A stretch of DNA of 63,346 bases from Pocillopora damicornis (lineage: Eukaryota), in NCBI RefSeq assembly GCF_003704095.1, contig NW_020844919.1, positions 62,001 to 125,346 on the forward strand. The letters are read 5' to 3'. The position numbers and the translations under genes are program-made. The notes under the pieces were generated by a model that saw only the letters and a program-made list of their open reading frames with translations, did no database searches and had not been told where the DNA came from. Below are positions 11,563 to 56,924 of the stretch, in pieces (positions within the stretch are counted from its first letter, which is position 1; each line of letters begins with the position of its first letter).

Positions 11563-12003
11563 GCGTTTTGGGCAGTTTTTACGCTCCTCTATTTGGCCCA
11601 AATGATCAACTCAGCTCCTTGCGGAGTGACGTTAGTTACACCAAGAAAAGTCGTGGAAAGAGTTTCCAGGTCTGGTTGGTTACTGGTGCGAGGAAATTCA
11701 TGGGAGGATTTTAGGAAAAGTTTGAATATTCGGCCTCGCCAGAGGAGAGGCATTAATCAAAGAAAATCCCGTCACTGTAATTGGACTGACGAGCTTGACG
11801 AGAACGTAAATAGAAAGCCAAGATTTTTACACAAAGCAGTACTAGGGTGCAAAAGTTGCTCTTCGTTTTGCAAGCCCGTGGAGTTTGATCATAAGGTACT
11901 TGTTAAAGATTGTAACGCCAGTCTAAGAACTCACAGAGAGAGAATGGACGTCTGGAAATGGGAGACAGTGACACTACCAGTGGCGTTTGTGTACAATCCT
12001 TAA
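11563..12003 (+). CDS. Secreted IL-17/Trunk-like cystine-knot-superfamily protein 1, exon 2 (153 aa spliced)
   Basis: Signal peptide, APCG, basic RPRQRR, then CNW..DE..NRKPRFL.KA...CKSCSSFCKPV....KVL...C...WKWE...PVAFVY. The CxW-x6-R-x-P-x2-L-x2-A-x-C pattern resembles the IL-17 core. Three paralogs occur in this window. Confidence 0.8.
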   Translation, partial: AFWAVFTLLYLAQMINSAPCGVTLVTPRKVVERVSRSGWLLVRGNSWEDFRKSLNIRPRQRRGINQRKSRHCNWTDELDENVNRKPRFLHKAVLGCKSCSSFCKPVEFDHKVLVKDCNASLRTHRERMDVWKWETVTLPVAFVYNP

Positions 12004-12440
12004 AAAACACCAAATCGATGTAGCTACCTTCTATGTGTCATCGTGACATTGGGAATATACGACACAAGATTTGGATGAATCTGCAAAGTACCTCAAAGAG
12101 ATAAGCTATATAATCTATAAATATGAAAACCACTTAAATGAGTGACGAAAGGAAGGAGAAAAAGAAGGACATAAACGAACTAATATAAAAAAGAAGAAGG
12201 ATGTGAACTCCGAAAGTAGTTCAGAAGGAGAGCCTCTGTGTAGACACGCACTTAAATTCAATATGATGTAAAAGTTATAAATATTTCCTTCTATTATAAA
12301 GTAGGCAGATAAAGAATTTTAGAAGGAGAAACAGGCTGAATGAATTTAATTCTAAATTTGACTATTCGTGATGCTTTTAGAAAATTTTTATCATCATTTT
12401 GTGATTATTTATTATTCCTCGTACAACGTGAAAATAGCTT

Positions 12441-12651
12441 TTAACCCTTTAACTCCCAGATCGAATTTGTAATTCTCCTTACTGTCAACCATACAATTCT
12501 TATCATGTTAGTTCCGAGAATTAAGTGTTGGATCAACTAGTTATCCCCAAATTGATATTTTTCTTTATTCTCATCACTTATCTGGTTGACATTGTATTGA
12601 TATTGTAAGGAGAAATTCTGTCTTGGTCACTCATGGGAGTTAAAGGCTTAA
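12441..12651. mobile_element. Complete TTAA-flanked piggyBac-like MITE in the 3' region of cytokine-like gene 1
   Basis: TTAA-ccctttaactccca ... tgggagttaaaggc-TTAA. Confidence 0.85.
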
Positions 12652-15310
12652 AGCCGTTTTTAGGATTGCTGAATGATGTGGAATAGAATTCTACAGATTC
12701 TGTGCCAAGCATGGAAAAAAAAAGTTGACTCAAAGAGTTAGAAATATGTTTTCTCTAAGTTGAGAACACTCAATAATGGTATATTTATTTTACTTTTTAT
12801 CTTATTTATTATCACTTCAATTACTATGATCATCGTCAATATTATCACTTTTTTGATTGTATCCATTTATTTCAAAGAACACGATTTTTCTAAATAATCA
12901 TTTTATATCATTTTTTTCTAACAGAACGTCCCAAAGATGCGCTCATTTATTTAATTATATTCAATACGTAACCAGAAAATAAACAGCCTTGTAGTATCTT
13001 TATTTATTAAACAAATGTTATAATATTTCAGATAGTTTAAGTCAGAGTGATTAACTGGAATAAAGTGAATGAAAATGAAAACTAATTATGGTAATCATTC
13101 ATGCCGATTTCGGGAATATATAATCTAAATTGAAATTTGTGGTGAGTTCCTTTAGTCTATCGTAGGCCAATAAACACCAACATTGTGGCTTGTACAAATA
13201 TCTTATTTTGTTTGTAAACAATTCTGTCACCAGCTGACAAATTACAGCTCATTTTTTTACGGTTACTACACACCTTGACGGCTTCAATAAATCAGTGATC
13301 ATCGAAAACGGCGGATTCGCACAAATTATTCTTGTTCACTTTACTCCGATGAGGATTTCCGCATAGGCAATGGTGACGCCGGTCACTGCAACCAATATCA
13401 GTCCATTTTAAGCCCTACTCTGACACAGAGGATCAGACTACACAATTACACATAATGATTTGCGATGGAACAGTTTGCAGCAGGTTTTCTGCGCTTGGAC
13501 AGTTTCATTCTTTATTTCGGCTTCTTCTTCTCCCTTACGTATTTGCTATCATAGAAATCTAAAATCTTTTAGGCTGAGCGATTTTTCATTCAGCACAAAA
13601 CATTGTGACGTGTAATGTACCTTCACGCCTGACAGCTCAGCCAGATATGATGCGGATGTCCGCTGAAGGCTCTTCGTTATCAATATTCTCCGTATTTCTT
13701 CTTCAGTAAATTTAATCCGTTTAAAAGGAGCTTAACTTTCGCAATTTAGGTTTGAAATCATATAAAACGGAAGCGGTGTGTTTGGCTCGTTTGAACGGGT
13801 CAATATAAGCTTTGGCTGCTCCCAGTTATCTTGGAAGCAACGCCAATTCAATCTGAATTTAATCCGTCGTTCAAAGCCAAGGATTTAGAGGTTGAGATAT
13901 CTTGTGTCAGCGGTCGAGCTCGATCCTCGACACGAGGGTCGGCAGAGGTAAAGCGATTACAATTTTTGCCCATAGCCGCTTTTGGATGTATAATATCCCT
14001 GATGCGTGACGTGACATGTAATCTGATTTCCAGAAACTCTACCGTTGTTACTTACAATTGCATCAATGTTTCTAAAAAAAATGTCATAAAGAATTACGCT
14101 ATTTTATCAGATGTCCCCTCAGTTTCAGTAGGGATTCTTTACATCCTTCAGAATGTGCTAAATCGGATGCGTGACTGGGCAAGATATTATTTATGCAAAG
14201 GTATTTTCATCAAAGCAAAACATTTGACTCTAGGCATGTAACGCAATACACTAGCGTGCTTCCAATCGACTTCCTGTTATGTGTTTCCATAGATATCGGC
14301 CAAACCAACTTACATCGTCTATACAAACAAAAAAAAAAAACGGGGTTTGTTACTGTAAACGTCAATTGTGACTCTTGAGTAGTGTAATTTAACATTTGGA
14401 TCGGTTATTATGGTGAGTCATTGTGTCGCGTCATTAACCCGTGAGTAGATTGCTGTGAAACTAAAATTCTCCGGAACTTTCGGTCGCTGTCTTTGAATCA
14501 GTAATTTTTTAATAAAATGGAAACTTGGAGTAAACAATTCATGACATAAGGGCAGTGTTTACGTCAATGGCCTCTTCTATGGCTTTGCTTGAAGGGACAT
14601 GACAATCTGAAAGCCGCAGCGAAAGGACTTCATTTAAATTTTACTAGAGGGGGAAATAACCTGGCGGTTTCGTTAAGGCAGAGTTAAATCACCGAGTAAC
14701 ATTTTTTTAGCGAAGATCTAACGGGCAAAGTCAGCAAAATAATAACGTCGCGCGGTTTCAATCGTATCTTCTGACGCTGCCAGTAAGTACAAGTGCTATT
14801 TTTGCGGACGCAACCCGGTTTAGCTCGAAAGAATAGTTTAGTCACTCAATAAAATTAATTTGCCAGTAATATTGATAGAGATTGCAATCAAAATAACATC
14901 TAAAGAACTATTGCGCAACTGGAAAGTAGTTTCCCCTTCGAAGGACTCATCAGCGTGACATTGTAGCATTTTGGCGTGACGGAGGTTATGAATCATGATA
15001 GGCAGAAGAGTTTCACCACCGTTTAAGCTCAAACAAAGGGGTTTTCAGGACGTGAGTAATGGAGCAAATTTAAAATTTGCTGAAAACATAAAAAAGAAAA
15101 CCTTTTCTTTAACTTATACGTAATTATTACTTCTAAACTAACGATATTTCCTTAAAAGGCTTCTGTGTGGGAGGAAGATATAAGATTACAATACACGGAG
15201 CAGAAATATACACGGAAGAGGAAAATTCGTTCGGCGCTTCATTTGTTTTGGTACACAATCTATCAACTGAGTTAAAAATAAATCTTTTTTTAGATAATTT
15301 ACCAATGTAA

Positions 15311-15364
15311 GGGGTTTCCCTTAGCTGCAATAATGGCACACCCATTCTAGGGTGTCTTAAATAG
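15311..15364 (+). promoter_or_regulatory. Promoter of cytokine-like gene 2: NF-kB site and TATA-like element
   Basis: GGGGTTTCCC at 15311-15320, TTAAATAG at 15357-15364, ATG at 15469. Confidence 0.55.
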
Positions 15365-16583: not shown

Positions 16584-16799
16584 TTAGCTTTTTTTTTAGT
16601 TTTGTTTGATGTAAATTGTTGGAATGTTGACAATTTGTTTGCCTAGGTTGTCGAAAACGCATGCGCAGTCTATACAACTAACAACTTTTCAATTCCACTT
16701 CACGCACCGCATGATTAACTTTTACTCCCCTGCGTAGAAGATGTACTGTAAATGTTAGACTGATGATAAGGTTAATAAGACATAACTTGTTCCTCACAG

Positions 16800-17240
16800 A
16801 TTCCTGGCTTGCTGGCCTCTTTTGTTATTACATTACTGGCAGGGCCATTGCCACAACCATGTGGTAAAAAAATGTACCCTAAAAAGGTGCTGCGACGTAT
16901 ACTGAAGGAGAAACGCTTTATGATCATGGAAAACGCCATGGCTGAGGCAGACGAATCAGGCCTTAAGATACCGCTACTAAGAAAAACACGCTCTGCCTCG
17001 CCCATAATGCAGGGGGCATCTCCCTGTCAATGGCAATGGCGGTCTACAGACCGACCAAGTGAAATTCCAAGGTTTTTAAGAGAGGCACATTGTCCAAACT
17101 GCGACCATTACTGTACCGCCATAAAGTACACAGTTAAAGTTTTGGTCCAAGATAAGTGCGACCCAAAAAGCGGCTTACCAATCTGGCGATGGAAGGAACG
17201 TGAAATAAAAGTTGGGTACTTTTACAAGGGAAGCAGATAA
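16800..17240 (+). CDS. Secreted IL-17/Trunk-like cystine-knot-superfamily protein 2, exon 2 (154 aa spliced)
   Basis: Acceptor cctcacag at 16799. Signal peptide, QPCG, furin-type RKTR, then SPCQWQW..DRPSEIPRFLREAHCPNCDHYC..KYTVKVL...KCD..WRWKE..VGYFY. Confidence 0.82.
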   Translation: MPGLLASFVITLLAGPLPQPCGKKMYPKKVLRRILKEKRFMIMENAMAEADESGLKIPLLRKTRSASPIMQGASPCQWQWRSTDRPSEIPRFLREAHCPNCDHYCTAIKYTVKVLVQDKCDPKSGLPIWRWKEREIKVGYFYKGSR

Positions 17241-19339: not shown

Positions 19340-20181
19340 CTACTCCAGAGCTTTGATCTCCTCGACAGCTTTCCTCAACGACTTAATGCATATCACAAGC
19401 TCCTCTTTCGTTTCCAATCGTTGCAGGCCCAGACCTAAAAGCTTATTCAATGCGTCCATAAGGCGTGCTTTCAAAACAGCATTACCGTTGCTCCCTTGAT
19501 TTCCTCTCATCGCGCCATAAGGGTTGTCGCCGACGCTCTGTGTCATCGGTGCACTACAGTTGGAAACGTCCACATTAGTAGAGAAGGGGTAGGTATTGAG
19601 CTGAACTGTTCCCCCACGAATTTCTGCATTGGCAGCTTGCGTGGCTTGACAGCTCTGAAAACTCCTGTCTGGAAGAAGAGAGGACATACCTTGCTGTTGC
19701 TTCCCTGTATATTCTTGCACATCTACTTTTTCCGCAAGTAAAGGAGTGAACGTTTTCTGAATCTTCGTCGTTATCGGACCCTCTTCGGAAGCAGAAAGAG
19801 GTCCTGTGGAAGCATCGAGCCGGGTGGTTGTCAAAGTAACCGTTTCGTTTGCACCAAGGTGGTTCCTACTTTGCTCCAGACGTGAAGATTTCACAAACGG
19901 CGCAGAGCTGGTTGGTGAAACAAGAGGATGTCCCCTCTTCTGTTGATCAGTTGGATAGGTGTAAGTCCTGAGCCTCAATGGAGACGAGAATTCATTTGCT
20001 GATGCTGTGCGATTGACAGCTGTCTTTCCACCTACAAATCCACAAAAGTTTTTCTATTTTCAACTTTTATAAACGTAACTTAGTTTGTTAGAGCTAAAGT
20101 AAGAATATTATTTTCTGCTTTTAAGGGGCTCTACAATAATTATCAGTACGGCGGAGGGCGNNNNNNNNNNNNNNNNNNNNN

Positions 20182-20223
<42 letters not shown>

Positions 20224-21497
20224 AGCTGCTGAAAAGCTGACTGAAGGATTCAAATACCCAACTATCTTACTAAAATGATATTCATTACTTTTTGGGACTG
20301 ATTTGATATGAATAAACATAGTGTATATGCATAAAAATTTAACAAAGAGCTAACAGTAATTAATAATTGTTTTGAAGCAGTTTTTAAGGTCCTCAATCAG
20401 ATGGCCATAAGTTAACATGGTGCCCCCCTCTTTATACCACCCCCCCTCCCCCCCCACCCCCTTCTCCTGATAATTATTGCACAGTCCCTAATCGGTCAGA
20501 AATGGGCGGAAATTTCAAGTTTTTAACACAGTTTTGAGGGCATTACAGAAAGCAACCCTGCTTACATGTCGAACTATTTTAACACGCTAATAAAAAATTC
20601 AAATTTCGAAACCAAGAAACAAACATTTCTTTATTCCGACAGGAAATAACTTCGTGGTCATTAGATTTTCCCTTTTTGCATGACGTTGTTTAAAAATTGA
20701 TGAACCCACTTTTATGTGCTGTGTCCTTTTCTTTCTTAGCTACGAATTCTTCAATTTTAAATTTCCTGAGGTTTCCGTATATCAAATCGTTGCCTTTACG
20801 CAGGGCCCACCAAGGCAGCTAACAACAGTTGCGAATTCATTACCAATGTGGCTACTCAGTTTGAAATAGATTATCATCACTTTAATCAGGACCTTTGATA
20901 GGCATTCCTGTTTAACATGCATATATACTTAAACTACATCGTAGTCTTGCAAATTCAATTCTTTCATATTTCAATTCGAATAACTTTCATAGAGTAAGAC
21001 TTTACAAAATGATGCTTTAAATCACCTTTTAAGTCGCTACTATTCACCGAAGAACAGCTGTCGATGTGATGAGGTGCGCTCATTTTCCTTACATTCTTGG
21101 AGGGAGAGGAGTTTGGTGTGACAAGGTCATTCCTTTCGTCATCGGTAACAACTCTTCTTTTCCAATGCTGGCTCTTGTCCAAGGTGTTGCTGTCCGCCAT
21201 CTGAGACGCCACGAACTCTTTAAGTTTTTCTTCCATGCAAAAGGGTATGCAGCAGTAAACGTCATCGCACGATTCAGCGTGTTTTTTAGCGAGGTTTTTC
21301 ATGCGTTGGCACACCTGGCACTGGGTCTTTTTGCAGCCCTGTGTGTGTTTCATCGTCAACTTCATGTTCACACAATGTGGAAGTGGACACTCGGGGTTCC
21401 AACAATTTAAAGTGTGTTCTAGAAGTTCTAGGGAACTTTTAAACCGTCCTTGTACGGCAGCTGCATCTTTTGTGTTTGTGGTTTCCTGTCCTGCCAT
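19340..21497 (-). CDS. Stand-alone TAZ2-type zinc finger protein 1 (CBP/p300-like fragment, no HAT), 2 coding exons, 387 aa
   Basis: Exons 21497-21026 and 20031-19340 join in frame across a phase-1 GT-AG intron. Three complete HCCC sites (HTLNC..C..C, HTQGCKK..C..C, HAESC..C.IPFC) resemble CBP TAZ2 (HACQC, HTKGCKR, HAKHC..CPVPFC). The C-terminal helical motif is shared with the three paralogs. Confidence 0.85.
20125..20488. mobile_element. PIF/Harbinger (Tourist)-like MITE in the intron of TAZ gene 1
   Basis: TAA-ggggctctacaataattatcag ... ctgataattattgcacagtccc-TAA; contains poly-G/poly-C tracts and a small gap. Confidence 0.7.
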
Positions 21498-23224: not shown

Positions 23225-23335
23225 TTTTATAGGCACCCTCTCTTATTGTTGAGGCATATAGCGATATCTGGTTGTTAAAAATGCGGAATTTTCGAATGAG
23301 CAATTCCGAGCAATTTACTTCCGGGGTATGACTCA
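23225..23335 (-). promoter_or_regulatory. Candidate promoter of TAZ gene 1 (TATA, kB-like, ETS, AP-1)
   Basis: Minus-strand TATAAAA at 23231-23225; GGAATTTTC at 23285; ACTTCCGG at 23317; TGACTCA at 23329-23335. Minus-strand donors near 23172 and 23105 and an acceptor at about 21519, just before the ATG, imply a non-coding first exon. Confidence 0.45.
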
Positions 23336-26600: not shown

Positions 26601-26640
26601 AATTTTTGTCTTGTCCCTCCGATTACACGGGTTAAATACA

Positions 26641-26784
26641 AGGGGGAGGGGTAGGGGGAGGGGGAGGGGTATGTTAAGAACATTACAGAGCCTTGTGGAG
26701 GGATCAGGTGAATTATATTGTGTTACAATTAAAATTCTCCAACTCCAATCCTCCCCTCCTAGGCGATAAATAACAAACGGTTCC
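26641..26784. mobile_element. Partial copy of the 17981-18303 MITE family, immediately 3' of TAZ gene 2
   Basis: Shared aagaacattaca.agccttg..gggatcaggt block and cccctcc..ggcgataaata end. Confidence 0.55.
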
Positions 26785-26798
26785 GCTCCATCGTGCCT

Positions 26799-37600: not shown

Positions 37601-40600
37601 AGCTTTGCCTTTCGTTCGTCATGCAATTTCCCCGTGACAAGTAGAAAGGAAGTAATTCCCTAAACTTCCTCTGTGCGTGAAGCTGACGAAAATAAATCGC
37701 GGCCCTTGATCCGACAAAGTTTGATGGCAACATGGACGATGTGAAACAGTGGTTACGCATAAGCACATACTTTCCGAATGCTCTTTGTAACACCATCCTA
37801 TCATACTAAAGCAGACCTTGACGTGGGAGAGGAAGCATTCGCCGAGCCTCGTGAAAAATGATCCGTAGGATTGGCTCCGTAGGATTGGCTCCATAGGGTT
37901 CTTTCAAACGTTCTTGTAAACTTTTATATAACGAATTACCATCGTGCCGCGACTATCGACCAATTGTTTTCACAGAAGAATGTTGTGTATCCGCGAAGCG
38001 GCGGAGCCGACGCCAAATTACTATGTTTTGCAGTAGCATTTATGAGAAGAGGTAAGCTTTAGTAAAAGTTTTAATTTTTACATTTGGAACTGAGAGGTGC
38101 CCTCAAACTTATCGCTACGGAGAGTTCTGATGCAGTTTCTAGGCATACAAAGGGGGAACACATTTCTTCCTTCGAGGAATGTTTGCTACAATTGTGTCGC
38201 CGTCGCAACTGCTTACTAAAGAGAAGGGAACGCAAGCAGCACTGAGCATGCTTCACCAAACGATTTGCGTTTCGTTGCCTATGAGGAAATTATCAATTGC
38301 GTCGACGACTAAGTTACACATTTTCCTCTTCGGCCCTCACGTCGTGTATTACGGTATAGGTCCGGATTGAGGAAGAGACGAGATGCATCTAATTGGAGGA
38401 TAAAAACAAGACTGACAAATGTCAATGCTAAAGTATGAATATTTCAGTCGGGCCGTCACGCATGGGACGTAAGCATAAAATTACCACTGAAATACGGTTG
38501 ATTTTCTTTTCCTCAAATTTAAGCAACAGAAAAGAAGATGGGAATGATGTCAAAAATCTTGGGAAGAAAAATTGATGGTGGTAAACATTGAAATTGTCGC
38601 TATTCTGGGAAAAGGTGCTGAATAGGAAGCGACTCTGAACTGAGTTCCCTGAATCTAAAAGCTTACATGACGAATGAGAGCGCCTCCACGAAGCCGGTTG
38701 GTTGACGCAGAAAATACAAGAATGTCTCTGAAAGCGGATGAGATGGTAACATCTTTTTTTTTTTTTTTCTTCACATAGACTTATCAGGAAATAAAGACTA
38801 TATTTAAAAATAATATAAAATATTAGAAAACAAATGGACAGTTCGCAAAAGGAAAAACTTCAAAAATTTCTTCAAATTATATGTAAAGGGAACGTTTCAA
38901 TTTAACTGTAGAGAAGCGTTTATGAACTTTACTTTATGAACCTATGGCTCCTTGATATGCAAATTCAGCAGCAGTTGTTTTCATACCTGCACAGAGAGAA
39001 ATGTCCTAAGGTCTAAAACTGACATATAGATACCTTTTCCTGTTAATTCAATCTTTTCTTTGGTTGTGACAATAGGAATAAAATCGTCGCTAGGCAAATG
39101 CTTGAAGGTAATAATGGCTCAGCGGGTGCGCCAGATGGAAAAACGTGGTTCTTTCTTCGATTCCCGCATCAACAAAACAAAGTTCAAAGTTCAAGGTGCT
39201 CTGGAGAAAAAGAAATAAACGTCGAGCAAGTCCTTGACGTACTTAAGGTAGGAAACTCGTGATCCTAAAGGTAACTGAAATGCTTACTGAAACGGTTTAC
39301 CAGCGCAATGTTACGCTACCATTTCAGTCGCATTTTCTTTTGTCTAACTTATCGTTTAAATAGGAGTTGAGTTCTCGATCTTTGTATTTCGCGCAACATC
39401 ATGGCGTTATATATTCCAAATTATTATAATTTTCAGCGATTTTTATCGTTTTGTGTCGTGAAACTTTTGTAAGGGCTGCATCCATGTTCGTTGGCCAGCA
39501 TTGGTTTGGTCTCATCAAGCAACCCGCTCTCTCCCTCCCCTCCCCTGTCAACAAAACCAAACAACGGCTGCGAAGGAGACTTGAGGTTTCCCGTTTGCAT
39601 AAAATGAATAACTTTTGAGTCAGCACTTTTTACGAATGTTTCTTTTGCCTATTTATAATGATAAAAATCCTTTTTTCATTACGGCTCGCTCTTGCGGAAG
39701 CTTAAAAACGCCCTAGGCACATTTCACAAACCTTTTAAGTGAAACTAACTTAACAAGAAGAGCAAGCAAAAGGCAAAACCCACAGTGATGGAGCCGATTC
39801 ACAGCTGGAGATCAAATGGAGCTATCCTTATGTCTTCCGTTTCCGTTTAGGTCATGGTGTTATCACGAGTTTCTAGCATTGCGAATGGTTTAAAAATAGT
39901 GGCCCTATCTCATCAGTTTTCTACTTGAGACCCAGATAAAATGAGAACCTTGGTTTAGTCTCTGCACAAGGAAGAAATGATAGCCCCTCACCTTGGATCG
40001 TGTTTTTGAATAATTCGCAGGACATCTAAAATGTTTAAGGTAAGGATAATTGTAGTTCAAAAGTTGATTACTAATTCACCTGCAATGTTTTTACTTGTAA
40101 CTAACTTATCAAGTGGAAAATTACAAAAGCAAGTAATAACCATTGAAACAATACATAGGTAGAGAGAGAGGCAACATCTGAAGCAAAGAGTTATTTAGGA
40201 GTGAAAGAAACTAAAGCATTTAGGAGATGCCGAGATGTATAAACCTCAGTTGTTTTTCTGCAGTCTGTTACCGTGCAATATGTCATCGTGATAATACATC
40301 TTAGAAAAAGTCCAACTTTACAGAGAATTCATTAGAACAGATGATTGTAAGAAAAACCTAAGGAAAGCTAGCTACCATCTTTGTTAATACCTCAACAAGG
40401 GGACTTTACGACTATCCATGTTTTTGTTAATGTACATGTTGTGTACCAGAGAGGTGCATCAAAACAAACTAAGAGTTTTTTTGATAGACGTTTTGGCTAC
40501 AAACATATAATGTTAATTAATGGTCAACGATTTTAGTGCATTCACAGGAAATCAACATGTGTTACCGTCAATCACTGATTCAGAATTTAATCAACAATTT

Positions 40601-41303: not shown

Positions 41304-44300
41304 TTTTAGTTTCATTCCCGTAGGGAGTCCTTTACTTATAGTCATGGAACGCTCAGGCAACTCGCTTTAGACCTCACACGCGCAACGGTTTTCAAAATGC
41401 CCGCCACAAAACAAAATTACATACGGCTTACTCATAAAGCAAAACTTTTCAGGGGAATGTATCCTCATACAGGAGCCTATAACAGAAAAGAGGTATATAG
41501 GAGGGGGAGTGGTAGGGGGGCTTACGTTTGGAAATGCAGAGAATATACCAGAATAGCGCCAAGAATGGATAAAATTCGCCAGCGCACGATTTTCTAGTCA
41601 TTTTCCGTGACCTTCCTGATTCGGAAGAGGTCTCCTCGCATCATGAGGGAATTCAAACGTGGCTACAAGGACACTGTTCTCCAGTTTAATAATCGCAGTT
41701 CTTCTGTGGTAGGTACAGCTATAGTTGTGAAATAATCTTAGGATCAGTTTTCATGCGTCTCTAATACAGTAGTTCTCTTTGGCCGAATGCTAAGAGAAAT
41801 TGAACCTTGTTCCATATATATACCTGGTCGATGGGAGTACAAACAAGATTAAAATCGTCTGAAATGTGCGTGTCGCAAAATTATCTGTTCATTCGATCAC
41901 AAAGGTTTTCTTTGACTCTCTGTTAACAGGCTTACTATCAAAGCTAACAGACATTATAACGGTTTGATACAATTCAAAGCTTTTTGTATCTGCTATTATT
42001 TTTAAAATCTGTTATCTAACTACTAGGGCTACCATAAGCGTCATGCAACTTCTTCGTCAGTCTTTATTCATAGGGGTAAACCGGAACTTCCCTGTGCCAA
42101 ACTGAAAACAACATATTACATATCGTATTTTATCGTATTTTAATTTGAATGCTTTCGATAAACGATTTGGGGTCTTCCAGGTTGGTTTTCAGCCTAGTTA
42201 ACATGGTATCTTTACGCAAAAAGGTAACATTAGTTTGTCATTGTGGCTGTCACTTGTGATTAGCACTTGCACGGTATACAAACTCAAAATTTCGCTTTCG
42301 CGCCGGCAGTATCATTCTCGACCGCCTTTCGGCCAGACGTTTGAACCAACCACCTATAAAATAATCTGTCGAGTTAAAAGCAAACCAGTGAGAAGTTTTA
42401 CTTATCTTGCAATGAAACATTCGATAAAAGTGGAATTTGGAATGAATTACACAAACTATAAGAAAAAATTCTCGGCGAAATCAAAGGTTATTCAGTAATT
42501 TAAAACAAATAATTCACTCAGTTTGAGATCCACCCTTCAATACGCCCGCTTTTGAAACTCATACTTTCGCCGAACTTTCTGCTTTTTCATTTACTTTTTT
42601 CAATAGGAAGCGGAGGAGTTGTTTACTGGCGTAACCGGCATCGAGTACTTTCTCTTGACAAAATAACCATGAACCCATCATCGGTTAACCTGAGCTAGAG
42701 GCAATAAGAATGTGTAGATACAAACAAATTGAGAAGGACCGAAAACCGTCTTCCTTAATGGATGCGCGAAGAATATATTAGAGCTAAATTTAAGTTTCCA
42801 TTTCCGAAAGATCATACACGCAAGAAACAATCGAATAAAAGCATCTTTTTCAACAGAAACTGGGCCTGGGTCATAAATCCAGTTTAATTTTCTTGTGCCT
42901 ACTTCGAGATGTAATTCACACAATCTTTTAAAGTTAATCGTCTAATTCCCATTTGTTACAACGAATCTTCAAATAGACTAAATCCACCAGTAGAGGCCCC
43001 TTTGGAAGAACATCGCTCGGAACTAGTCAGAGAGCATCAAAAGTTTGTTCACTTCAATAATAAGCACAGATGACGTTTTGTATCCTTAGATTTTAACGAT
43101 ACCCTACTTCAAGGTCCTGAGAGAATTAAAAATTGCCTTTTCATTATACAGAGTTCGGACTGAATCCTTACCACTTTCTCCCGATATTAAGACATCATAA
43201 TTTCTGTCAATCGAAGCTGTGATAGTGTTTATGCCCGTATCGCTTAATGACATTTTGTAGTCTTTTTTCGGTGCTTCTCAGTTCGCCGTGGAAGCAATGT
43301 TTATATTGTTGCAGTATCATAAATTAGCTACATTTATGTATTTTGTGATGTTCAGAAATAGCTTCAACTAGACAGAAGAAAGACAGTAAGTTAAGACAGA
43401 GCAAGCATGGCAAAGGACGTGGACGAATACAGAATGTAATAACGAGTTGGAGGTTAGGTTGTTCGGTTGTTAGGTTTCCTATTTTGATCAAGGTGCTAAA
43501 ACTATAAATATTGTGTTGGTGTCTTAGCTATCACTGTCAAAGGTCAGCAAACAAACATATCAAAACAAAAAGATTAAGGCATGCGTAAAACATGCTATGT
43601 AGACATTCAATGCACTAATGCGTGCTGAGTGACTAGTTTTAACCAGTGATTGATATATTGTTTCAGGTAATATTTTTAAACTTGATAACAACAGTATTGG
43701 TTAAAAAATGACGTCACAATATTTTGAGTCAATTTGCACGACGTGCTATTTAAACTGTCTTCAATTATTATATGGTTACAAAATTACCCATTTTTTGCTT
43801 AAAAAAAAAGAAAAACGAAAGAGAGCTGAGGAGATTAAACCAAGAAGTAACAAAAATGGTGGAGAGTGAGAAAGATTTCACGAATTGCAAATGACTAATT
43901 TAAAGATTTATCGTCGGATGCATGTACCGTGACCATGGTTCGTTTACGCTGGCCTGATAGTTTTTATTCTGAGAAGAAGCTGACCTCACGAACGCAAAAC
44001 TCAGCATTTTGCTTTCAAAAACAAGCGACAAAGTTGATGTGCATGTCCGTTTGACAGTCAGACTCTAGGCGGCGCATGTGCGACGACAAAATGTGCTCCC
44101 TCGGCATTTTCTTAGTATCAATCATCAGAACATACCAGTTCCCTGCCTTTTAATGCTAGAATAAAGATGATACAAGCAAAAAAAGTTCTAAACGAATCAA
44201 GCAATGTTGTGTACGTCTCTTGAAACATAATTTTACGAAAATATACAGTAATCTTGACTTATACAGTGAAATTGAAACACTTTCTCTAAGATTGCGAGTA

Positions 44301-47600: not shown

Positions 47601-49191
47601 ATAATACAGCAGTCTTTAATTTTTTAGTCAGATTTTTGTTTCAGCATCTAACTACTTCCTTAGGATATTACATACACAAATTGTCTGGTGGAAGGCATAA
47701 GCATAATTCAGTTTGATTCTCGTTAGGATCTGAAAATACCTCAGAGTGCCAAATAAATATTCAACAATTTCACTTACTAGAAGGCTCCATTTTTCGTCAC
47801 CCAACTTTTTTGTTAGTCACCCTTTTTTTCCTTTCCTCGTTTTTTTCCCTTTTCTTCCTTTTCCGCATTGAAAATAAACCTCTTGTAATCCTGATAGGCT
47901 TTACTAGAAGACTCTCATTTCCGTGTCTGTGTTTTTCGTCCTAGAATTCCCTGTTTTTTTTTCAGTAAAACCGGCCGACTGAGAATTGACCAACCATTAA
48001 TTAATTCAAGATTAAGAAAGGGGACTGGCGAGTCAGCTCTCTATTTAGAGTTAATGGGAGCAGACTCTCAGTGTTCAAAAATATTTATAAACCACTTAGG
48101 ACCGAAAAACACGTTTCAGCATGATTCCGTCGAACCAAACTGGCTACTTAAAGCGACAAAGTCATCCGTTAGTCAAAAATTTGTCAACAGAACTAAATAT
48201 TGCAAAACTCACCGCTACAATTTATGTTAGTAGAAAACAATAAAAACACTATTAAAACATAATTAATATTACGTCTATCAAACTCAAGAAACGTTTGTAA
48301 ATCTCACCAGTTGTTGAACTTATTGGTTAGAATGAAGTGGTTTCCATAACTACTTGGACAAGTTAGACCCTTCTGTTCGTTAACGCAAGACTACTAACAC
48401 TGCATAATATTTTGATATGATAGTCCTTCATGCCCATCTTTGTAGTTCGATTTGCTGAGACAATCTTAATACTTAACATAGCGACGTTACGTCAGAGAAA
48501 GTCATGCTTCACTCAACGTTAGTCTTCCATATAGACAGCAAAAATAGTTGTTGGAACTTACGAACGAGTGAGGATTTAACTTCGTGGTATTCGAATAATC
48601 AAACCAGAATCAACCGGAAAGCGCGCTCACCATGGATACTCAAGTGCAACAAAGTTTGCGGCTGTCTATGTATTTGATGAGTTTATTTTAATTAATTGTA
48701 ATCATTGTCCGCGATTCAATGGCATAACCAAAAGTGAGACTAAAATGATAATAGGACTCGCTCTAATGGAGAGAACCTCAAATTACGACAATTTCAGGAG
48801 AAGAATCTTCATTTCGAAATCGGACTTGACTCAATTTCCACACAATGGTGTTATTACGCCGAACATTGTACTGTTCACTTTAAAGTTCATGAATAAACAA
48901 ACCTCCTCCGAGACCGGATTTCCTCTAGTGTCTCAAAAATACATCCGGCCTTGTGGGCGTCTGTTTATTCAAAGGGTTTTACTTAAATTAAATTTTTCCT
49001 TGCTGTTAAAAAGGTAATGCGGTGTTGATATGTTGTATCGGCAACTTCATACGCTTGGCATGTTTGTGGTTTTTTGTTTGTTATACTAAACAACTTCCTT
49101 TTTTAAATGCCGAGGTTTTGTTTGCCTCTGATCGCTGCTGGAATTTGTGAACACTAGCTATATTGTAATTATCATTTCTTGTATTTTTCAG

Positions 49192-49638
49192 CTTATTTGT
49201 CTACTGATTATTTATCTGTCCACAATGACGTCATTTGTAAACTCGTTACCATGCCAAAAAAGGACCAACATACAAGCGCCACGAGTATTACGTCTTCTTG
49301 AGGAAAAATACATTTTCGTGAAGAAAAAGACAAGAAGTGAAATTCCACTTCTTACAACCACTCCATTTCCACGACGAAGAACTACTCGAGTTGCAGACGC
49401 TTCAAACATACCGGGAACTACTTATTGTCCGTGGGTCTGGGAACAGGACGATGATCCCGAACGTGTCCCGCGGATATTAGTAAAAGCTAAGTGTCCTGGA
49501 TGTAAACATTTTTGTAAACCTGTACACTACCACCACACGGTTCTAATAGCAAAATGCGACAAAACTACAGGTCACAAAGTATGGAAGTGGAGGGAGAGAA
49601 AACTTGCCGTGGCATATGTTTATGAACCTTACGATTGA
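49192..49638 (+). CDS. Secreted IL-17/Trunk-like cystine-knot-superfamily protein 3, exon 2
   Basis: Acceptor tttttcag at 49191. Signal peptide, LPCQ, RRRTTR, then CPWVWEQDDDPERVPRILVKAKCPGCKHFCKPV (compare the IL-17 SPW...EDPERYP.VI.EAKC motif), ending WKWRE..AVAYVY. Confidence 0.85.
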   Translation, partial: LICLLIIYLSTMTSFVNSLPCQKRTNIQAPRVLRLLEEKYIFVKKKTRSEIPLLTTTPFPRRRTTRVADASNIPGTTYCPWVWEQDDDPERVPRILVKAKCPGCKHFCKPVHYHHTVLIAKCDKTTGHKVWKWRERKLAVAYVYEPYD

Positions 49639-50619
49639 CGGGAATTCCTTGTGGCTGTGTGGATCGTCCTTCTTCCTAAACTTTTAGATTGTTGTAATTT
49701 CATATGAAAAATATATTTTTATGGGATATTCATTATTTATTTTGAGAAAACCTCGAAAAAGGCTGAAGCTAAACCAAAGTGCAAACTCATTCCACAAAAA
49801 CAAAGAAAAAAATAATTTGAGATGTTGTGTCAACATCTCTCCAGGAGGGACATGCTGTATTTTTAACCACTGAGCCTCTTCCGTACCTTCTCTTTCTCAA
49901 CAAATGTTTTAAATACAATTTTATTATTTATGTTGAACAATCAAAATTAACCTGAATTTAGACAGAGCGGTGTATTTTCCAGATACATTTTAGGTTGTAG
50001 CAGAATACTTATTCATTGTAACTCAAACGAAATTATTAAGCCTTAGGTCCTTAGGTTTCTGCATGCAGTAAATGTCTGAGCTTGTTTTACTTCACTGAGT
50101 TTTCGACAATTTGATCGTCCGATTTAGAAAGTGTCCTATGGAAGCTTATGTTGCACATGTAATTGTGACCTTCGCACTCGCACAGCACGCATAACTATGC
50201 AATTAGCATAAGCACGAGCACCGCGCTTTGTAGAAATTATAATAATTCCGTAATGAATAAAGGTTTTCAGTTTTAACATGGAACTGAGCAAGTAACACTT
50301 ACAGAGTTAAACAGATAAATTATGAGCAATTTCGTTCGCAAAACTGCCTTTACTTATGGTGATGGTGGCCCAAAACATTTATTTCAGGTCATCATTGCTC
50401 TCACTCTTTTCTTATCACTTCCTTAAAAATGGCTTTAAAATATCTAATTATTACTCAAAAAGTTCTGGTGATTTTTTGACAGAGAGGGTAACCATAGAAA
50501 CACCACAGCTTATTACGAGCACCCCTAATGAACTAAAGTAGCACAAACAACACTATTTGTAGGTTAGAGTTTATTTACTTTACTATTTACGGAGTCATGA
50601 AACGGAGCCTACACTCCCA

Positions 50620-50860
50620 AACAAAGCTTTATAAAGCTGTCCCCTCACAGAGAGAGCTTAGGCACCCTGTGAGTTATGCAAATCCGAGACGCAGTTAAGG
50701 GTTTGCATAACTGTTGAGAATTCTCCCAACCTCCCGAGTGTTTAGATGAGAGTATGAAAACAGGGAAAAAAGTTTCCAATTGCTTTAATAAAATACTTTT
50801 CTCTAATAAAATGACAAATGAAGGAAAATGTTTTTCATTTACTTGATTGATAGAGATTTC
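50620..50860. repeat. Probable interspersed repeat fragment
   Basis: Internal inverted repeat agttatgcaaa.cc ... ggtttgcataact. It resembles a repeat I recall from coral genomes; only one copy is present here. Confidence 0.35.
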
Positions 50861-53800
50861 CTCGATTCATACTCTGGGCGCAAGTCATGACACGCATCTA
50901 CCGGCACATAAACCAATCAAGATTCACGTTATAAAAATCAAAGTCGCTGAAATCTGTGGCAAGCGCTAGCATCGTGTGAATGAACAATTACAGCTTTTCG
51001 NNNNNNNNNNNNNNNNNNNNNNNNNNNNNNNNNNNNNNNNNNNNNNNNNNNNNNNNNNNNNNNNNNNNNNNNNNNNNNNNNNNNNNNNNNNNNNNNNNNN
51101 CCCTAATTATTTCATAAATACACGTGGTAAACGCGCTGTCTGTTTTCGACTTTTCTGTATAGTGTGAAGCAAGCGGAACCTGTATGAGCAAGGTGCGACA
51201 AAGGAGTTGTACAAATTTCGGATATTTTACAGTACTAGGCGTGGACCGTTGTAATTAGGAAAAGAAGCAGAAAGTAAGAGCACGTGCAGGAATGTTCACT
51301 TCCGGTGATTGTGTATTTCAAGTCCGGTCTCGCCATTTTTTTCCTTATAAGAACCAGTATAGTTTTACTAGTTTTACAGTCTCCAATCTGTTTGTTCCCG
51401 CGTCCATTAAAACTTAGCCCACGTAGAAGCTTTCTTTCCGACGCCAATGATTAAAATAATTTCTCAAGAAATTATATGAAACTTCTGTTTTAAAATGTCA
51501 ACGTGTTTCCTTCATGAAACACAACTCTTGCGAATCGCTCAAATAACGATACTATTGGGTAAGCTTCCGCAGTCAATTGGCTTGTTAGTTTCCCATTAAA
51601 GGAAAAGAAGAAAAGTAGATGAAAAAACAGTTCCGCTGTCAGCGTTAGCAGTTCTTCATCTACATACCATCTTGAGGAATAACCATGTTGGCACCTAGTT
51701 TCAAACGTTAAGTGCATGGCATGAGCCAGTTACCAAATATTTTGGTTAAGGACTGTCCTTGTGCAGACCAGAAGACTTATCAGCCTTAAGATCGAGTTTA
51801 CAAGTCGAAAACAAATCGTGGTTTTTCTCTCAAAAAGTTGTTTGTTGAAAATGTATTCTTTTCTTTGATGATAATTAAGTCTAAATTTAAAAATGCTGTC
51901 AGCACTCGTTGTAACTGAGGTACTTATTTCCAAACGATCCGTTTTGTCTCTCTAAGGGACAAAGAAATTTGAAAGTCAAAAAAGCCGCAGACTCCAAATC
52001 GATCGTCAAACTATAAACTTATAAAATATTGAATCTTTAAATAATTAATTAGATATTGCTAACACGCGATTTATTTCCGAAATGTGGACTGAAAGAGTTT
52101 CATTAAGCCAATTTCCCCCCCAAAAAAATCTCTTTGCGATGACGTAATAAGAGGAAGTTTTTGAGTAAGAGTTGTTCCCAACGCACTCGACCTCCTTGGA
52201 AACTGCGTCGGCCTATATTGTTTGAGAACCTTTTACCACAAAGTTTTTAAACAAACAGAGTTTATGTTACAAAGGAAACATATGTACTAGTTGAAAGTGT
52301 CAGAAATTCGGATACAGCTGAGGAAATACCACGCAAACGTGGATATAGGTCGAACTCATCCTTCTCTCACTTACCTCTGTGCCTTAATTATCATAAACGT
52401 ATTTATAATTATCATCTAAAGGAGCAAGGGTGTATTCTTTTTGCCCGTGATCAAAACTCTGCAAAGTTTGATTGAAAATTGTGCGGAGCAAATTTTGCAG
52501 TAGTTAAACAAAGCTTTACATTGCGTCTTGTAACATAGGCGGATCACGTCAAAGAAATTACAGGACTCATGTTAGGAAAGAAGCAAGAAAGACACGGTTA
52601 TGACCAATTGGTGAATTGGTGAATTGAACACAACAGCTTATCAGACAGCTATGTGGTTAAAAACGCTCAAAGCTTGTTTCGCGATTGCATGTATATGTTC
52701 AATAAAGTACACACCGTGAAACATAACGAAGAAAGGACCTTTTCTGAAAATATTTCGAGACAACTATATATCTAAATATTACAGAGCTAGAGAATGCATA
52801 TTAGCAAGAGTTTCGATATCTCTTTGTTATAATAAAGCAAATCAGTTTTCCTGCAGTTTCGTGCACACAACCTTTTGTTAGACGTTGGGTAAAACCTGAA
52901 CTGTGAAACTTATCATAACGCAAGATGTTAATTTTTAAAACGCGTTGTTTGAAAGGAGTTTTAAGCATGTCGCAATGTTTGCTCTTAAGGACGTGATGGT
53001 TTGCACACATGAGCTCGACAATGATCAGTAGCAAAATATTAAACGCACAAGAATTATTCACAATATATAACAACCCTTACGAGCTTACCGAGCTTACCAT
53101 CTTGAAGGAAATACTCCAATATAACATAAAACCAGAGGAAACATCACGACCTGTTTCATATGTTCACTCACGCTAGGCTGGGTAATCGAGTGTGAAGACG
53201 ACAAATGTGCATAATTTAAGTTTGTTTAGTTTCGTCATGTCATGCTGACACAATTTTAAGTGTGCTAAATATTTTGCCTTTTAAGTGTGCCTGATATTTT
53301 GCTTCGGTGCATTCTCTGATAACCTCTCATTTTAAGTTTGATGAACCCAAAGACTGTGTGAAGTAAAGCGGATCACTGAGTCAAAATTTGAAATAACACT
53401 GAAACGAACGGTTTTGTGTATTAGAAAGAACAAACATTGAAATAATCTGCTCGATAAATATGAACGCGCTCAGACATAAACGTTCTCCAGATGGAAGAGC
53501 AATGTCAAGATGCGATGTTGTGCGCGGTAATACGTTTTAAAGAAGTTAACATCTTTTATAATTCAATGATTCAACTAAATTAGATTAAAAATAGTTTTAT
53601 TTAAATTAAGGAGGTTGTTATGTCTGTTTGAATTCTACAACGAAGGCTATTTACATATCAAACTATGTTGCACGTGTAATTATATTAACGGAATAACATA
53701 ATACCCGAACGATGTTAAGATTTAAACTCCTTAAAATCTGTTGAAAAAGTTAAACCACCGCACTAATAATATCAATTATCGCAATTCTCGAGTCTCGAAG

Positions 53801-55379: not shown

Positions 55380-56361
55380 GTAAGATATCTGTTAAGTTCT
55401 GAACCTTTATAGACTGTGTATTAAGTAAAAACTAACTGAAAACGAGTGTTTATTTTATTACGTAAGCAATAGTCTAATATTTATCCAGTCTTCTCTGTCT
55501 TTCTACAAGACGGAGTTACATTAGTCTGGAAAAGAAATTTTCGGTCATTAATTTCATCAAGATTCGCCAACAAAGTTCGAAGTGGATTTAAAGTAAAAAT
55601 AAAAACTTCTTTGTAAAATCTCTTGTTAGCGTTTGGTTTCCATGAGGCTAATTCGTAACATAAAAAAAGGTTTTCTTACGCGGGTAGCCGAACATTTGCA
55701 ACAAATTTAAATTTTATCTGTAAATGCTCTTAACAGAAATCTCTACGGAAAAATCGTTGGAGAAAAAAATATACTATCTGATAATCTTAACACTTTTAAC
55801 TATAAAAACCCAAACACTAGGCAGTACGCATTCTCACAATTCATTTGAAAGTAAAATCTCCCCTCTCGGTCGCGAGTTAATGGTAAACGCACTCTCGTGT
55901 AAATCTTTAAAGCATCACATGTTTTGAGACTGATTTGAAACAAATCTTAAATTCAAATTATTGGTATCATCACTAACACCCACCGATTACTTTATGCGGC
56001 ATAAGTTAGCCATTGGTATCATTTGACTGGCTTTTTGTTTTTTAGTTTTTTTAATGAATCGTTCTTGCGTTCCTTGATCAGAACGTGAAGCTGAACAAAA
56101 AAAGAACAAAAAAATAATTTTTTCTTTAGTAATTTATTATCTTGCATGAAATTGGAACTTTATGAAATCTATGTCCTCTTTCACGTTGCCCACGAAACTC
56201 CCTCGCCAGTAGTAACTGACTTGCTTGTCAATTTTACGTCAATGTATTGACTCTAAATTTGTGAGACAAAGGAGACGTGCTGACGTAAGGGCTAGCGCTC
56301 TTAGCACTACTCTGTACTATTATATGTTTATCTTTTTGTGTGTGTTTGCTTACTCCTCTTT

Positions 56362-56384
56362 TGTTTGTTTGTTTGTTTGTTTGT
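56362..56384. repeat. (TGTT)n microsatellite
   Basis: tgtttgtttgtttgtttgtttgt. Confidence 0.85.
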
Positions 56385-56495
56385 TATTTAGTTTTTTGTT
56401 TTTCTTTAGCATATGTAAGTGATCAGGTGCGATGTTTAATAATCTTGTGGAAACGAAAAATGATGAAAGAATCCTTTTTGTTTCGTAATTCGCAG

Positions 56496-56924
56496 TTTTT
56501 GATGTGTGCGATTTTCATTGCGGTTATCATTTTTGGCTCCATGTCACCACCTGGTTGCAGCGGCTGTGTGGCGAGACAAAACTTAACTGATACTCAAATG
56601 ATGCAACGGATTCGCCAAAGGGGCTACCTTTTCATGAAAAACAAGCTCATTGGTTCTAATGGCTCCCAAAACAACTTCCCCAACGGGGCGCATGCAGGTA
56701 CCACACTATGTCCGTGGAAATGGGCTTTAGATGACAATCCCGACCGACTTCCCAGATTCCTATCAAAAGCTGTATGTCCTTCATGCAATCATTACTGCAA
56801 AGCCATACACTATACGCACACCTCTCTCATTCAGCGGTGCGATCGAACAACCGGTCTGATGTATTGGTCGTGGATGCCAAAGACAATGGCAATAGCTTAT
56901 GTGTATGTACCTAATAGAAAATAA
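56496..56924 (+). CDS. Secreted IL-17/Trunk-like cystine-knot-superfamily protein 4, exon 2 (147 aa spliced)
   Basis: Signal peptide, SGCV, then GTTLCPWKWALDDNPDRLPRFLSKAVCPSCNHYCKAIHY..RCD..WSW..AIAYVY; closest to paralog 3 (GTTYCPWVW). Confidence 0.85.
   Translation, partial: FLMCAIFIAVIIFGSMSPPGCSGCVARQNLTDTQMMQRIRQRGYLFMKNKLIGSNGSQNNFPNGAHAGTTLCPWKWALDDNPDRLPRFLSKAVCPSCNHYCKAIHYTHTSLIQRCDRTTGLMYWSWMPKTMAIAYVYVPNRK

What the first reader, a model, noticed from the sequence alone, without database searches (positions are those of the whole stretch)
11563..56924. Cystine-knot-like cytokines whose terminal CxC is replaced by aromatic residues
Seen: where IL-17 ends in VGCTC and Trunk/PTTH/Noggin in CxC, all four paralogs have VAFVY, VGYFY, VAYVY or IAYVY. 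The loop between the ring cysteines and the CxP[VI] strand is shrunk to CxxCxxxC. Six cysteines are conserved: the N-terminal C, CxW, CxxCxxxC and the finger-2 C. Established: the knot ring needs the CxC pair. Inference: a 'knot-less' variant of the fold, with rewired disulfides (perhaps a CxxC bond or interchain bonds) stabilised by aromatic packing.
Basis: partly seen in the sequence, partly recalled or inferred. Interest (0 to 1): 0.78.

Follow-up and report, generated by a model that had tools for sequence, protein, structure and literature searches.

The report
Coral IL-17-like cytokines without the knot

Summary
Four + strand ORFs (11554-12003, 16809-17240, 49147-49638, 56340-56924) encode paralogs ending in VAFVY, VGYFY, VAYVY and IAYVY. 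All four share six cysteines: an N-terminal C, CxW, CxxCxxxC and a finger-2 C. The three assembly gaps lie between genes, not inside any ORF or mapped exon.

- A profile of 112 family members aligns to seven true Pfam-IL17 proteins (hhalign 99.3%, E 3e-20), with [YF]x[Y] lying exactly over CxC.
- The AlphaFold2 model (pLDDT 86.8) has only IL-17A/F/IL-25 as its top solved matches (Z 8.3, rmsd 2.2-2.4 Å over 75 residues).
- PolyA RNA contigs from three studies run unspliced through the stop codon, so no further exon supplies a CxC.
- dN/dS against an ortholog is 0.19.
- The genome holds at least 20 such loci, no IL-17 with CxC was detected, and SEFIR receptor-type loci are present.

How cysteines are lost together across the family suggests the pairs C1-C4, C2-C3 (the local CxxC) and N-terminal C with finger-2 C. 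This wiring is inferred, not shown.

Novelty is low. PNAS 2024 (PMC11087794) already defines cnidarian "T3-type" IL-17s that lack cysteines 5/6. Added here: the near-invariant aromatic residue (110 of 112), the wiring inference, the gene structure and the size of the expansion.

The parts
11554..12003 (+). Paralog 1: ORF of 149 aa plus stop. ATG start followed by a hydrophobic signal-like N-terminus. VAFVY lies at 11980-11994.
   Evidence: matched by a true-IL-17 profile at E 4.7e-6
16800..17240 (+). Paralog 2: main coding exon. It has no ATG. A pyrimidine tract plus cag acceptor ends at 16799, so a short upstream first exon is expected but was not mapped. VGYFY lies at 17211-17225.
   Evidence: E 2.6e-14 with a true-IL-17 profile
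40008..40039 (+). Paralog 3, first exon (form a): 5' UTR, then ATG TTT AAG, then a gtaagg donor at 40040.
   Evidence: the loose 5' end of RNA contig X9 maps here with 1 mismatch
41643..41708 (+). Paralog 3, alternative first exon (form b): an in-frame ATG at 41643 and a gtaggt donor at 41709.
   Evidence: the loose 5' ends of RNA contigs X1 and X2 map to 41678-41707 exactly
49192..49638 (+). Paralog 3, coding part of the last exon, with the cag acceptor at 49189-49191. CxxCxxxC lies at 49492-49515. VAYVY lies at 49609-49623, where Tyr 49615-17 stands in for Cys5 and Tyr 49621-23 for Cys6. The stop is TGA at 49636-49638.
49639..50297 (+). Paralog 3, 3' UTR, colinear with the genome in RNA contigs. 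One run continues to 50824.
   Evidence: table 8: pieces 49191-50297, 49191-49957, 49190-50122 and 49190-50222, with no joint
56460..56924 (+). Paralog 4: CDS taken from the first ATG that precedes a signal-like stretch. IAYVY lies at 56892-56906.
   Evidence: E 4e-11 with a true-IL-17 profile

Best explanation
These are four tandem paralogs of the cnidarian 'T3-type' interleukin-17 family, in a stony-coral genome. I take the genome to be Pocillopora, from its size and contig count and from near-identical Tara Pacific coral metagenome contigs; this is an inference.

Each gene encodes a small secreted protein with the IL-17 two-finger beta fold. The ring of the cystine knot (Cys2-Cys5 and Cys3-Cys6) cannot form, because Cys5 and Cys6 are replaced by [YF]-x-[Y] on the last strand.

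Most likely wiring (inferred):
- Cys1 (CPW) bonds Cys4 (CxP[VI]), as in invertebrate IL-17s. With no ring to thread, this bond is just a plain staple between two strands.
- The orphaned Cys2 and Cys3 bond each other across the shortened beta2-beta3 turn (the CxxC).
- The N-terminal Cys bonds the finger-2 Cys, probably between chains as in human IL-17A/F.
- The aromatic pair packs where the ring used to be.

The proteins would act as homodimeric ligands of the coral's FN3-SEFIR (IL-17R-type) receptors.

Shown here: homology, predicted fold, absence of CxC, expression, the true C-terminus and purifying selection. Inferred: disulfide wiring, dimerisation, secretion and the receptor.
For: Homology:
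- Pfam IL17 is the best hit, though below threshold and covering only the CxW..DPxRxP..AxC part.
- A profile of the four paralogs hits IL-17A chains in the PDB (E 0.025).
- A full library search with a family profile ends in proteins with VGCTC termini.
- Seven of those proteins all match Pfam IL17 (best E 2e-18).
- hhalign of the 112-member family against those seven gives 99.3%, E 3.2e-20, with AYVY over GCTC.
- The reverse search, with the seven-protein profile on this genome, finds the window paralogs at E 1.5e-14 to 4.7e-6.
- 24 of the 30 nearest ESM Atlas clusters are IL-17.

Fold: AlphaFold2 pLDDT 86.8. Foldseek top hits are all IL-17A/F/IL-25 at probability 1.00. VIA-align gives Z 8.3, rmsd 2.2-2.4 Å over 75 residues, and all 50 entries listed are IL-17 family.

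No hidden CxC: polyA RNA contigs of 4 runs from 3 studies are colinear from 49190/1 through the stop to 49957-50297.

Constraint: dN/dS is 0.19 against the ortholog in L001, and the paralogs are saturated at synonymous sites yet keep the motifs. The Cys5 position is Y or F in 110 of 112.

Wiring:
- C1, C2, C3 and C4 are each present in at least 107 of 112 sequences.
- Two members lack C2 and C3 together but keep C1, C4, the N-terminal C and the finger-2 C.
- The N-terminal C and finger-2 C co-occur: 72 with both, 7 with neither, 11 and 2 with one only (Fisher p 1e-4, not corrected for phylogeny).

Dimer: ESMFold2 homodimer score 0.74, best of 3 controls 0.00.
- The mark was reached by 21 of 30 proteins solved as pairs of one chain, and by 0 of 23 solved as single chains.
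- On eukaryotes it was reached by 17 of 29 (animals 7 of 16), but by only 1 of 7 with no older solved relative, and by 0 of 30 single chains.
- The runs agree in at least 84% of contacts, and the partner's pLDDT is at least 77.
- The pass may be memory of solved IL-17 dimers.

Pathway: four SEFIR loci score over the Pfam cut-off in this genome.

Literature: T3-type IL-17s of cnidarians lack cysteines 5/6 (PMC11087794). Eleven IL-17 genes were counted in P. damicornis (PMC8353272).
Against: - No paralog reaches the Pfam IL17 gathering score (best 21.9 against 24 bits). The Pfam match covers only the first third of the domain.
- No disulfide was observed.
- The joint loss of C2 and C3 rests on two related sequences, so it may be a single evolutionary event.
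- Eleven family members keep the N-terminal Cys without a finger-2 Cys, so that pairing is not universal.
- The dimer pass may reflect memorised IL-17 complexes.
- Receptor binding, secretion and function are untested.
- RNA was laid only on paralog 3.
Confidence: 0.85

Rival explanations
1. The knot is intact. The CxC would be supplied by a further 3' exon, or it was lost through a misassembly or an assembly gap, so the ORF ends are artefacts.
For: The database proteins of this family are plain ORF calls, which cannot show splicing. Some even read the TGA stop as W. Three assembly gaps lie within the finding's span.
Against: RNA contigs from three studies read through the stop codon and about 500-660 nt of 3' UTR without a joint. 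The gaps lie between genes. Across the 112 family sequences the aromatic terminus is nearly invariant, and the 20 loci in this genome all end within a few residues of it.
Confidence: 0.02
2. They belong to another cystine-knot ligand family (Trunk/PTTH, Noggin, Spaetzle or NGF), or they are a convergent fold, and are not IL-17.
For: Pfam IL17 stays below threshold. Lower ESM Atlas ranks (0.87-0.90) include clusters carrying NGF, Spaetzle or Noggin domains. PMC11087794 names Trunk as the closest relative of IL-17.
Against: hhalign against Pfam-verified IL-17 proteins gives 99.3%. All 50 top solved structures are IL-17 family. The CPW, DPxRxP and AxC motifs are IL-17 hallmarks.
Confidence: 0.05
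3. The fold and family are the same, but the wiring differs. Cys2 and Cys3 would not bond each other. They would form interchain bonds (covalent dimers or higher oligomers) or alternative pairs (C1-C2 with C3-C4, or C1-C3 with C2-C4).
For: The four core cysteines are nearly invariant, so covariation cannot separate most pairings. Family members with five cysteines have an odd count, so some intermolecular bonding or free thiols must exist.
Against: C2 and C3 are lost together while C1 and C4 stay. C1-C4 is the conserved pair of invertebrate IL-17s (PMC4517768 and PMC11087794). Residues 90, 93 and 97 are not among the confident dimer-interface residues. The C2-C3 spacing varies from 2 to about 8 residues, as expected for a bond closing a loop.
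Confidence: 0.2
4. They keep the IL-17 scaffold but are not agonist cytokines. They could be receptor antagonists or decoys, or secreted effector or toxin-like peptides of a cnidarian.
For: There are at least 20 fast-diverging copies. Loss of the ring could change receptor engagement. Cnidarians often recruit disulfide-rich scaffolds (general knowledge).
Against: No canonical IL-17 that they could antagonise was detected in this genome. SEFIR loci are present and would otherwise lack a ligand. The predicted dimer interface and the N-terminal segment are conserved.
Confidence: 0.08

Closest known systems
T3-type IL-17 ligands of cnidarians (Huang lab, PNAS 2024, PMC11087794)
   Same: IL-17 homologs from cnidarians that lack cysteines 5 and 6, so two strands are no longer tied by disulfides. 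This is exactly the state found here.
   Different: In the text I could read, the paper gives one sentence and a figure panel. It does not mention the aromatic replacement, the fate of Cys2 and Cys3, the N-terminal/finger-2 pair or copy numbers of 20 or more.
T1A/T1B/T1C invertebrate IL-17s (for example P0123 from Dreissena polymorpha, Pfam PF06083)
   Same: The CPW, DPxRxP, AxC and CxP[VI] motifs, the finger-2 Cys and the overall length. Profile-profile homology is 99.3%. P0123 has an equally short loop (C-x-C-x3-C).
   Different: These proteins keep one or both terminal cysteines (VGCTC, VGCHS, GFTC). The window proteins have none.
Vertebrate IL-17A/F (T2 type; PDB 1jpy, 4hsa, 5nan)
   Same: The same fold (Z about 8, rmsd 2.2-2.8 Å). 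An N-terminal Cys and a finger-2 Cys sit at the positions that form the interchain bond in IL-17A/F. A homodimer is predicted.
   Different: The opposite cysteines are missing. Vertebrates lost Cys1 and Cys4 (now Ser) and keep 2/5 and 3/6. These proteins keep 1 and 4 and lost 5 and 6. Sequence identity is about 20%.
Trunk / PTTH / Noggin and other cystine-knot growth factors
   Same: The two-finger cystine-knot superfamily architecture.
   Different: No Pfam or structural hit ranks them above IL-17. They have full knots ending in CxC.

Membership tests
IL-17 family (Pfam PF06083) | Match to the Pfam IL17 model above the gathering score (24 bits) | tested here: not met
   Best score is 21.9 bits (paralog 3). 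The others score 18.6, 15.2 and no hit. Only profile positions 2-27 of 81 are matched. A six-frame scan of the genome finds none over the cut-off.
IL-17 family (Pfam PF06083) | Detectable homology to verified IL-17 proteins across the whole domain | tested here: met
   hhalign of A3 against A5 gives 99.3%, E 3.2e-20 over 75 columns. All 7 proteins of A5 match PF06083. The reciprocal genome search gives E 1.5e-14 to 4.7e-6.
IL-17 family (Pfam PF06083) | Two-finger four-strand fold that superposes on solved IL-17 structures | tested here: met
   AF2 pLDDT 86.8. Foldseek probability 1.00 to IL-17A/F. VIA Z 8.3, rmsd 2.2-2.4 Å over 75 residues. This is a prediction, not a solved structure.
IL-17 family (Pfam PF06083) | Motifs [CS]-P-W, D-x-x-R-x-P and A-x-C before strand 2 | tested here: met
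   the motif Cys is present in 110 of 112, the P of R-x-P in 106 of 112, and the A of A-x-C in 106 of 112.
IL-17 family (Pfam PF06083) | The four hallmark cysteines that form the 2/5 and 3/6 disulfides | tested here: not met
   Cys5 and Cys6 are absent in all four paralogs, in all 20 loci of this genome and in all 112 aligned members.
IL-17 family (Pfam PF06083) | Homodimeric ligand | tested here: inconclusive
   ESMFold2 score 0.74 against a best control of 0.00. The tool warns that the pass may come from memory of solved IL-17 dimers.
IL-17 family (Pfam PF06083) | Binds an FN3-SEFIR receptor | not testable with these tools
   Only the presence of four SEFIR loci in the genome was shown.
T3-type IL-17 (PMC11087794) | IL-17 homolog that lacks cysteines 5 and 6 while keeping 1 and 4, found in a cnidarian | tested here: met
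   for the sequence state, and for the definition. The cnidarian origin is inferred from Tara Pacific coral metagenome contigs that carry the identical protein and from the genome's size and contig count, which I match to Pocillopora from memory.
Canonical cystine-knot growth-factor superfamily | A ring closed by two disulfides and threaded by a third | tested here: not met
   There are no partner cysteines on the last strand, so no ring can form. The fold is kept without the knot.
Trunk/PTTH, Noggin | Sequence or fold match that is better than the match to IL-17 | tested here: not met
   No Pfam hit. These families are absent from the top 50 structural matches. They appear only at lower ESM Atlas ranks.

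The most novel reading that the evidence does not exclude
T3 IL-17s may be a natural, stable 'unknotted' solution of the cystine-knot fold. In this reading the ring is replaced by a near-invariant aromatic plug, and the two orphaned ring cysteines are re-used as a local CxxC staple. In this coral T3 would also be the only IL-17 type, expanded to 20 or more genes and signalling through SEFIR receptors. Cnidarians and vertebrates would then have dismantled the ancestral three-disulfide knot in opposite, complementary ways.
Probability: 0.5. Interest if true: 0.45.

Novelty: already known. Interest (0 to 1): 0.3.

Why it matters
IL-17 is the one mammalian-type cytokine family firmly traced back to cnidarians, and corals are a focus of immunity and bleaching research. 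Knowing that this coral's whole detectable IL-17 repertoire is of the knot-less type, is expressed and is under purifying selection gives concrete ligands to pair with coral IL-17 receptors. For protein science, the family is a natural experiment in how a cystine-knot fold survives without its knot. The basic fact is already in the literature. What is added here is detail and testable wiring, not a new kind of molecule.

Tried and rejected
- Pfam scan of the four proteins gave only sub-threshold IL17 hits. PF06083 on the whole genome found nothing over the cut-off.
- The word-based protein search found only close, unnamed orthologs.
- The listing of cluster members gave no names for any knot-less member. 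Only the mollusc IL-17 P0123 is named.
- Taxonomic assignment of the divergent subfamilies failed. The look-up of encoding contigs returns unnamed ENA assemblies, two of them without DNA. The ESM Atlas search for P0113 stayed below 0.9. The range of the [YF]x[Y] terminus outside corals and cnidarians therefore stays open.
- Supplementary data of PMC11087794 are not held. Those of PMC8353272 do not mention Pocillopora. I could not check whether these loci are in the published sets.
- Metal binding by C-x2-C-x-H-x-C was considered and dropped, because the His is absent in paralog 1 and not conserved across the family.
- Model coordinates are not returned, so Cys-Cys distances could not be measured.
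- The joined exon 1 + exon 2 protein of paralog 3 was not sent to any tool. Searches used the main exon by reference only.


Full report
**What is there.**
The window (G000:C1554:62001-125346) is AT-rich animal DNA at about 37% GC. Four + strand ORFs encode paralogs that are 25-41% identical to one another. They lie at 11554-12003, 16809-17240, 49147-49638 and 56340-56924.

They end in VAFVY-NP, VGYFY-KGSR, VAYVY-EPYD and IAYVY-VPNRK. All share an N-terminal Cys, CxW, C-x2-C-x3-C and a finger-2 Cys.

I checked the three assembly gaps first. 20161-20181, 30965-31064 and 51001-51100 all lie between genes, and nothing below depends on them. None was filled.

**Organism.**
The genome has 234,350,878 bases in 4,393 contigs. 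Proteins identical to paralog 3 sit on Tara Pacific METAG scaffolds. From memory, this size and contig count fit the Pocillopora damicornis assembly. I treat that as an inference.

**Is it a real, widespread family?**
A profile of the paralogs finds 20 loci in this genome, on contigs C1554, C147, C1689, C3135, C3967, C3410, C4363 and C4004. All of them end in [VI]-[AG]-[YF]-x-[YFLW] and none has CxC.

An exhaustive profile search of 1.84 billion representative proteins gives 140 hits, 80 of them below 1e-10. In a 112-sequence alignment (A3):
- The four core cysteines are each present in 107-111 of 112 sequences.
- The residue in place of Cys5 is Y (63) or F (47).
- The residue in place of Cys6 is Y (58), F (7) or W (6), and otherwise mostly L, M, R or K.

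**Is it IL-17?**
- Pfam IL17 is the top hit for three paralogs but stays below threshold and covers only the N-terminal part.
- A four-sequence profile hits IL-17A chains in the PDB at E 0.025.
- The tail of the big search contains proteins ending in VGCTC, VGCIC or VACSC. One is from the mussel Dreissena polymorpha.
- Seven such proteins all match PF06083, best E 2e-18.
- Profile-profile comparison of the 112-member family with these seven gives 99.3% probability and E 3.2e-20. AYVY is aligned over GCTC, and there is a 6-column gap in the ring-to-CxPV loop.
- The seven-protein profile, run on this genome, recovers only the knot-less loci. The window's four score E 1.5e-14, 2.6e-14, 4e-11 and 4.7e-6.
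- ESM Atlas features point the same way: 24 of 30 nearest clusters are IL-17, top score 0.94.

**Fold.**
AlphaFold2 with the 112-row alignment gives mean pLDDT 86.8. It predicts a short N-terminal helix and four long strands. Foldseek against the PDB returns only IL-17A, IL-17F and IL-25 at the top, with probability 1.00 and TM 0.5-0.6 by target length. VIA-align gives Z 8.3 and rmsd 2.2-2.4 Å over 75 residues spanning model residues 61-137. All 50 entries listed are IL-17 family. The tool warns that Z near 8 alone can be a common arrangement. Here it agrees with the sequence evidence.

**Does a further exon supply CxC?**
No, at least for paralog 3. Nine RNA runs hold most of the sampled words of this stretch.

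Contigs from four polyA or cDNA runs of three studies lie colinear with the genome from 49190/49191, through the TGA at 49636-49638, to 49957-50297. There is no joint.

The 5' ends of these contigs leave the genome at a cag acceptor (49189-49191). They map to two alternative first exons upstream:
- 40008-40039, reading ATG TTT AAG followed by a gtaagg donor.
- The stretch ending at 41708, followed by a gtaggt donor, with an in-frame ATG at 41643.

Form (a) supplies Met-Phe-Lys in front of a hydrophobic stretch. By eye this makes a signal peptide. The joined protein was not submitted to any tool.

Paralog 2 has the same kind of acceptor at 16797-16799 and no ATG. Paralogs 1 and 4 have in-ORF ATGs before signal-like stretches.

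Several metagenome-derived database proteins continue past the stop by reading TGA as W. That is a gene-calling artefact.

**Selection.**
dN/dS between paralog 3 and its ortholog on L001 is 0.19 (dN 0.136, dS 0.71). The paralogs are saturated at synonymous sites (pS 0.76-0.87) but keep the cysteines and the aromatic terminus.

**Disulfide wiring (inference).**
A minimal set of four cysteines (C1, C2, C3, C4) is nearly universal.
- Two members (P0133, P0142) lack C2 and C3 together but keep C1, C4, the N-terminal Cys and the finger-2 Cys. This is what a C2-C3 bond and a C1-C4 bond predict.
- C1-C4 is also the pair conserved in invertebrate IL-17s (PMC4517768; PMC11087794).
- The C2-C3 spacing varies from 2 to about 8 residues while C3-C4 is mostly 3. 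This fits a loop-closing bond.
- The N-terminal and finger-2 cysteines co-occur: 72 both, 7 neither, 11 and 2 single (Fisher p 1e-4, uncorrected for phylogeny).
- By the alignment and my knowledge of IL-17A/F, these two cysteines correspond to the pair that makes the interchain bond in the human dimers.

**Dimer.**
ESMFold2 with two copies of residues 8-137 scored 0.74, against a best control of 0.00 from 3 controls.
- The mark was reached by 21 of 30 proteins solved as pairs of one chain and by 0 of 23 solved as single chains.
- On eukaryotes it was reached by 17 of 29 (animals 7 of 16), but by only 1 of 7 with no older solved relative, and by 0 of 30 single chains.
- The runs agree in at least 84% of their contacts, and the partner's pLDDT is at least 77.
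- The interface uses the conserved N-terminal helix and strand (residues 17-35), strands 3 and 4, and the C-terminal residues 129-136 that carry the aromatic pair.
- Because IL-17 dimers are solved, this pass may reflect memory. It shows likeness, not binding.

**Pathway context.**
Four SEFIR loci exceed the Pfam cut-off in this genome. No IL-17 with CxC was detected.

**Comparison with the literature.**
- A 2015 survey found no IL-17 in cnidarians (PMC4517768).
- A 2021 survey counted 11 IL-17 genes in Pocillopora damicornis (PMC8353272).
- In 2024 Huang and colleagues classified IL-17 knots into T1A/B/C, T2 and T3. [quoted passage not shown]

- Near-invariance of the aromatic replacement.
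- Evidence from joint cysteine loss for a C2-C3 staple and an N-terminal/finger-2 pair.
- A transcript-supported gene model with alternative first exons.
- A count of at least 20 loci, with no canonical IL-17 detected in this genome.

**Limits.**
- No disulfide, dimer, secretion or receptor interaction was observed.
- RNA was laid on one paralog only.
- The taxonomic range beyond cnidarians could not be resolved, because the database hits carry no organism names.

**Verdict.**
Novelty is low because the type is already published. Interest 0.3.

Noticed in passing
window 19340-34479, minus strand: Four ORFs on the minus strand lie between IL-17-like paralogs 2 and 3. The ORFs at 33031-34479 and 20964-21497 carry a Pfam zf-TAZ domain (E 2e-9 and 7e-11). 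The ORFs at 26799-28046 and 19340-19978 have no Pfam hit.
   Followed up: partly
P0001-P0003, P0006, P0007 (database proteins); window 49636-49638: Metagenome gene calls of the orthologs continue past the TGA stop by reading it as W, as if under a TGA=Trp genetic code. This gives false C-terminal extensions of 60-110 residues.
   Followed up: yes
window 40008-40039 and 41643-41708: Paralog 3 has two alternative first exons, 9.2 and 7.5 kb upstream of its main exon. Different RNA studies use different ones. The second adds a 22-residue N-terminal extension in front of the hydrophobic stretch.
   Followed up: partly
G000 C3135, C3967, C4363, C4004 (loci L015-L025): A second, more divergent subfamily (C-P-F ... 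C-x-G-C-D-x-R-C ... VAY-I-L-E-I) occurs in tandem clusters. Some copies have lost a core Cys (L018, L024) or are interrupted by masked or unread letters (L025). These may be pseudogenes.
   Followed up: no
window 47420-48142: Short, low-depth RNA contigs lie inside the intron of paralog 3. One skips 56 nt (48050-48107) with non-canonical TT..AA ends, so it is probably not a real splice.
   Followed up: no
window 50267-50824: In one RNA run (X9) a contig continues about 500 nt beyond the 3' end seen in the other runs. It is either a longer 3' UTR or a separate transcript, and it ends before the gap at 51001.
   Followed up: no
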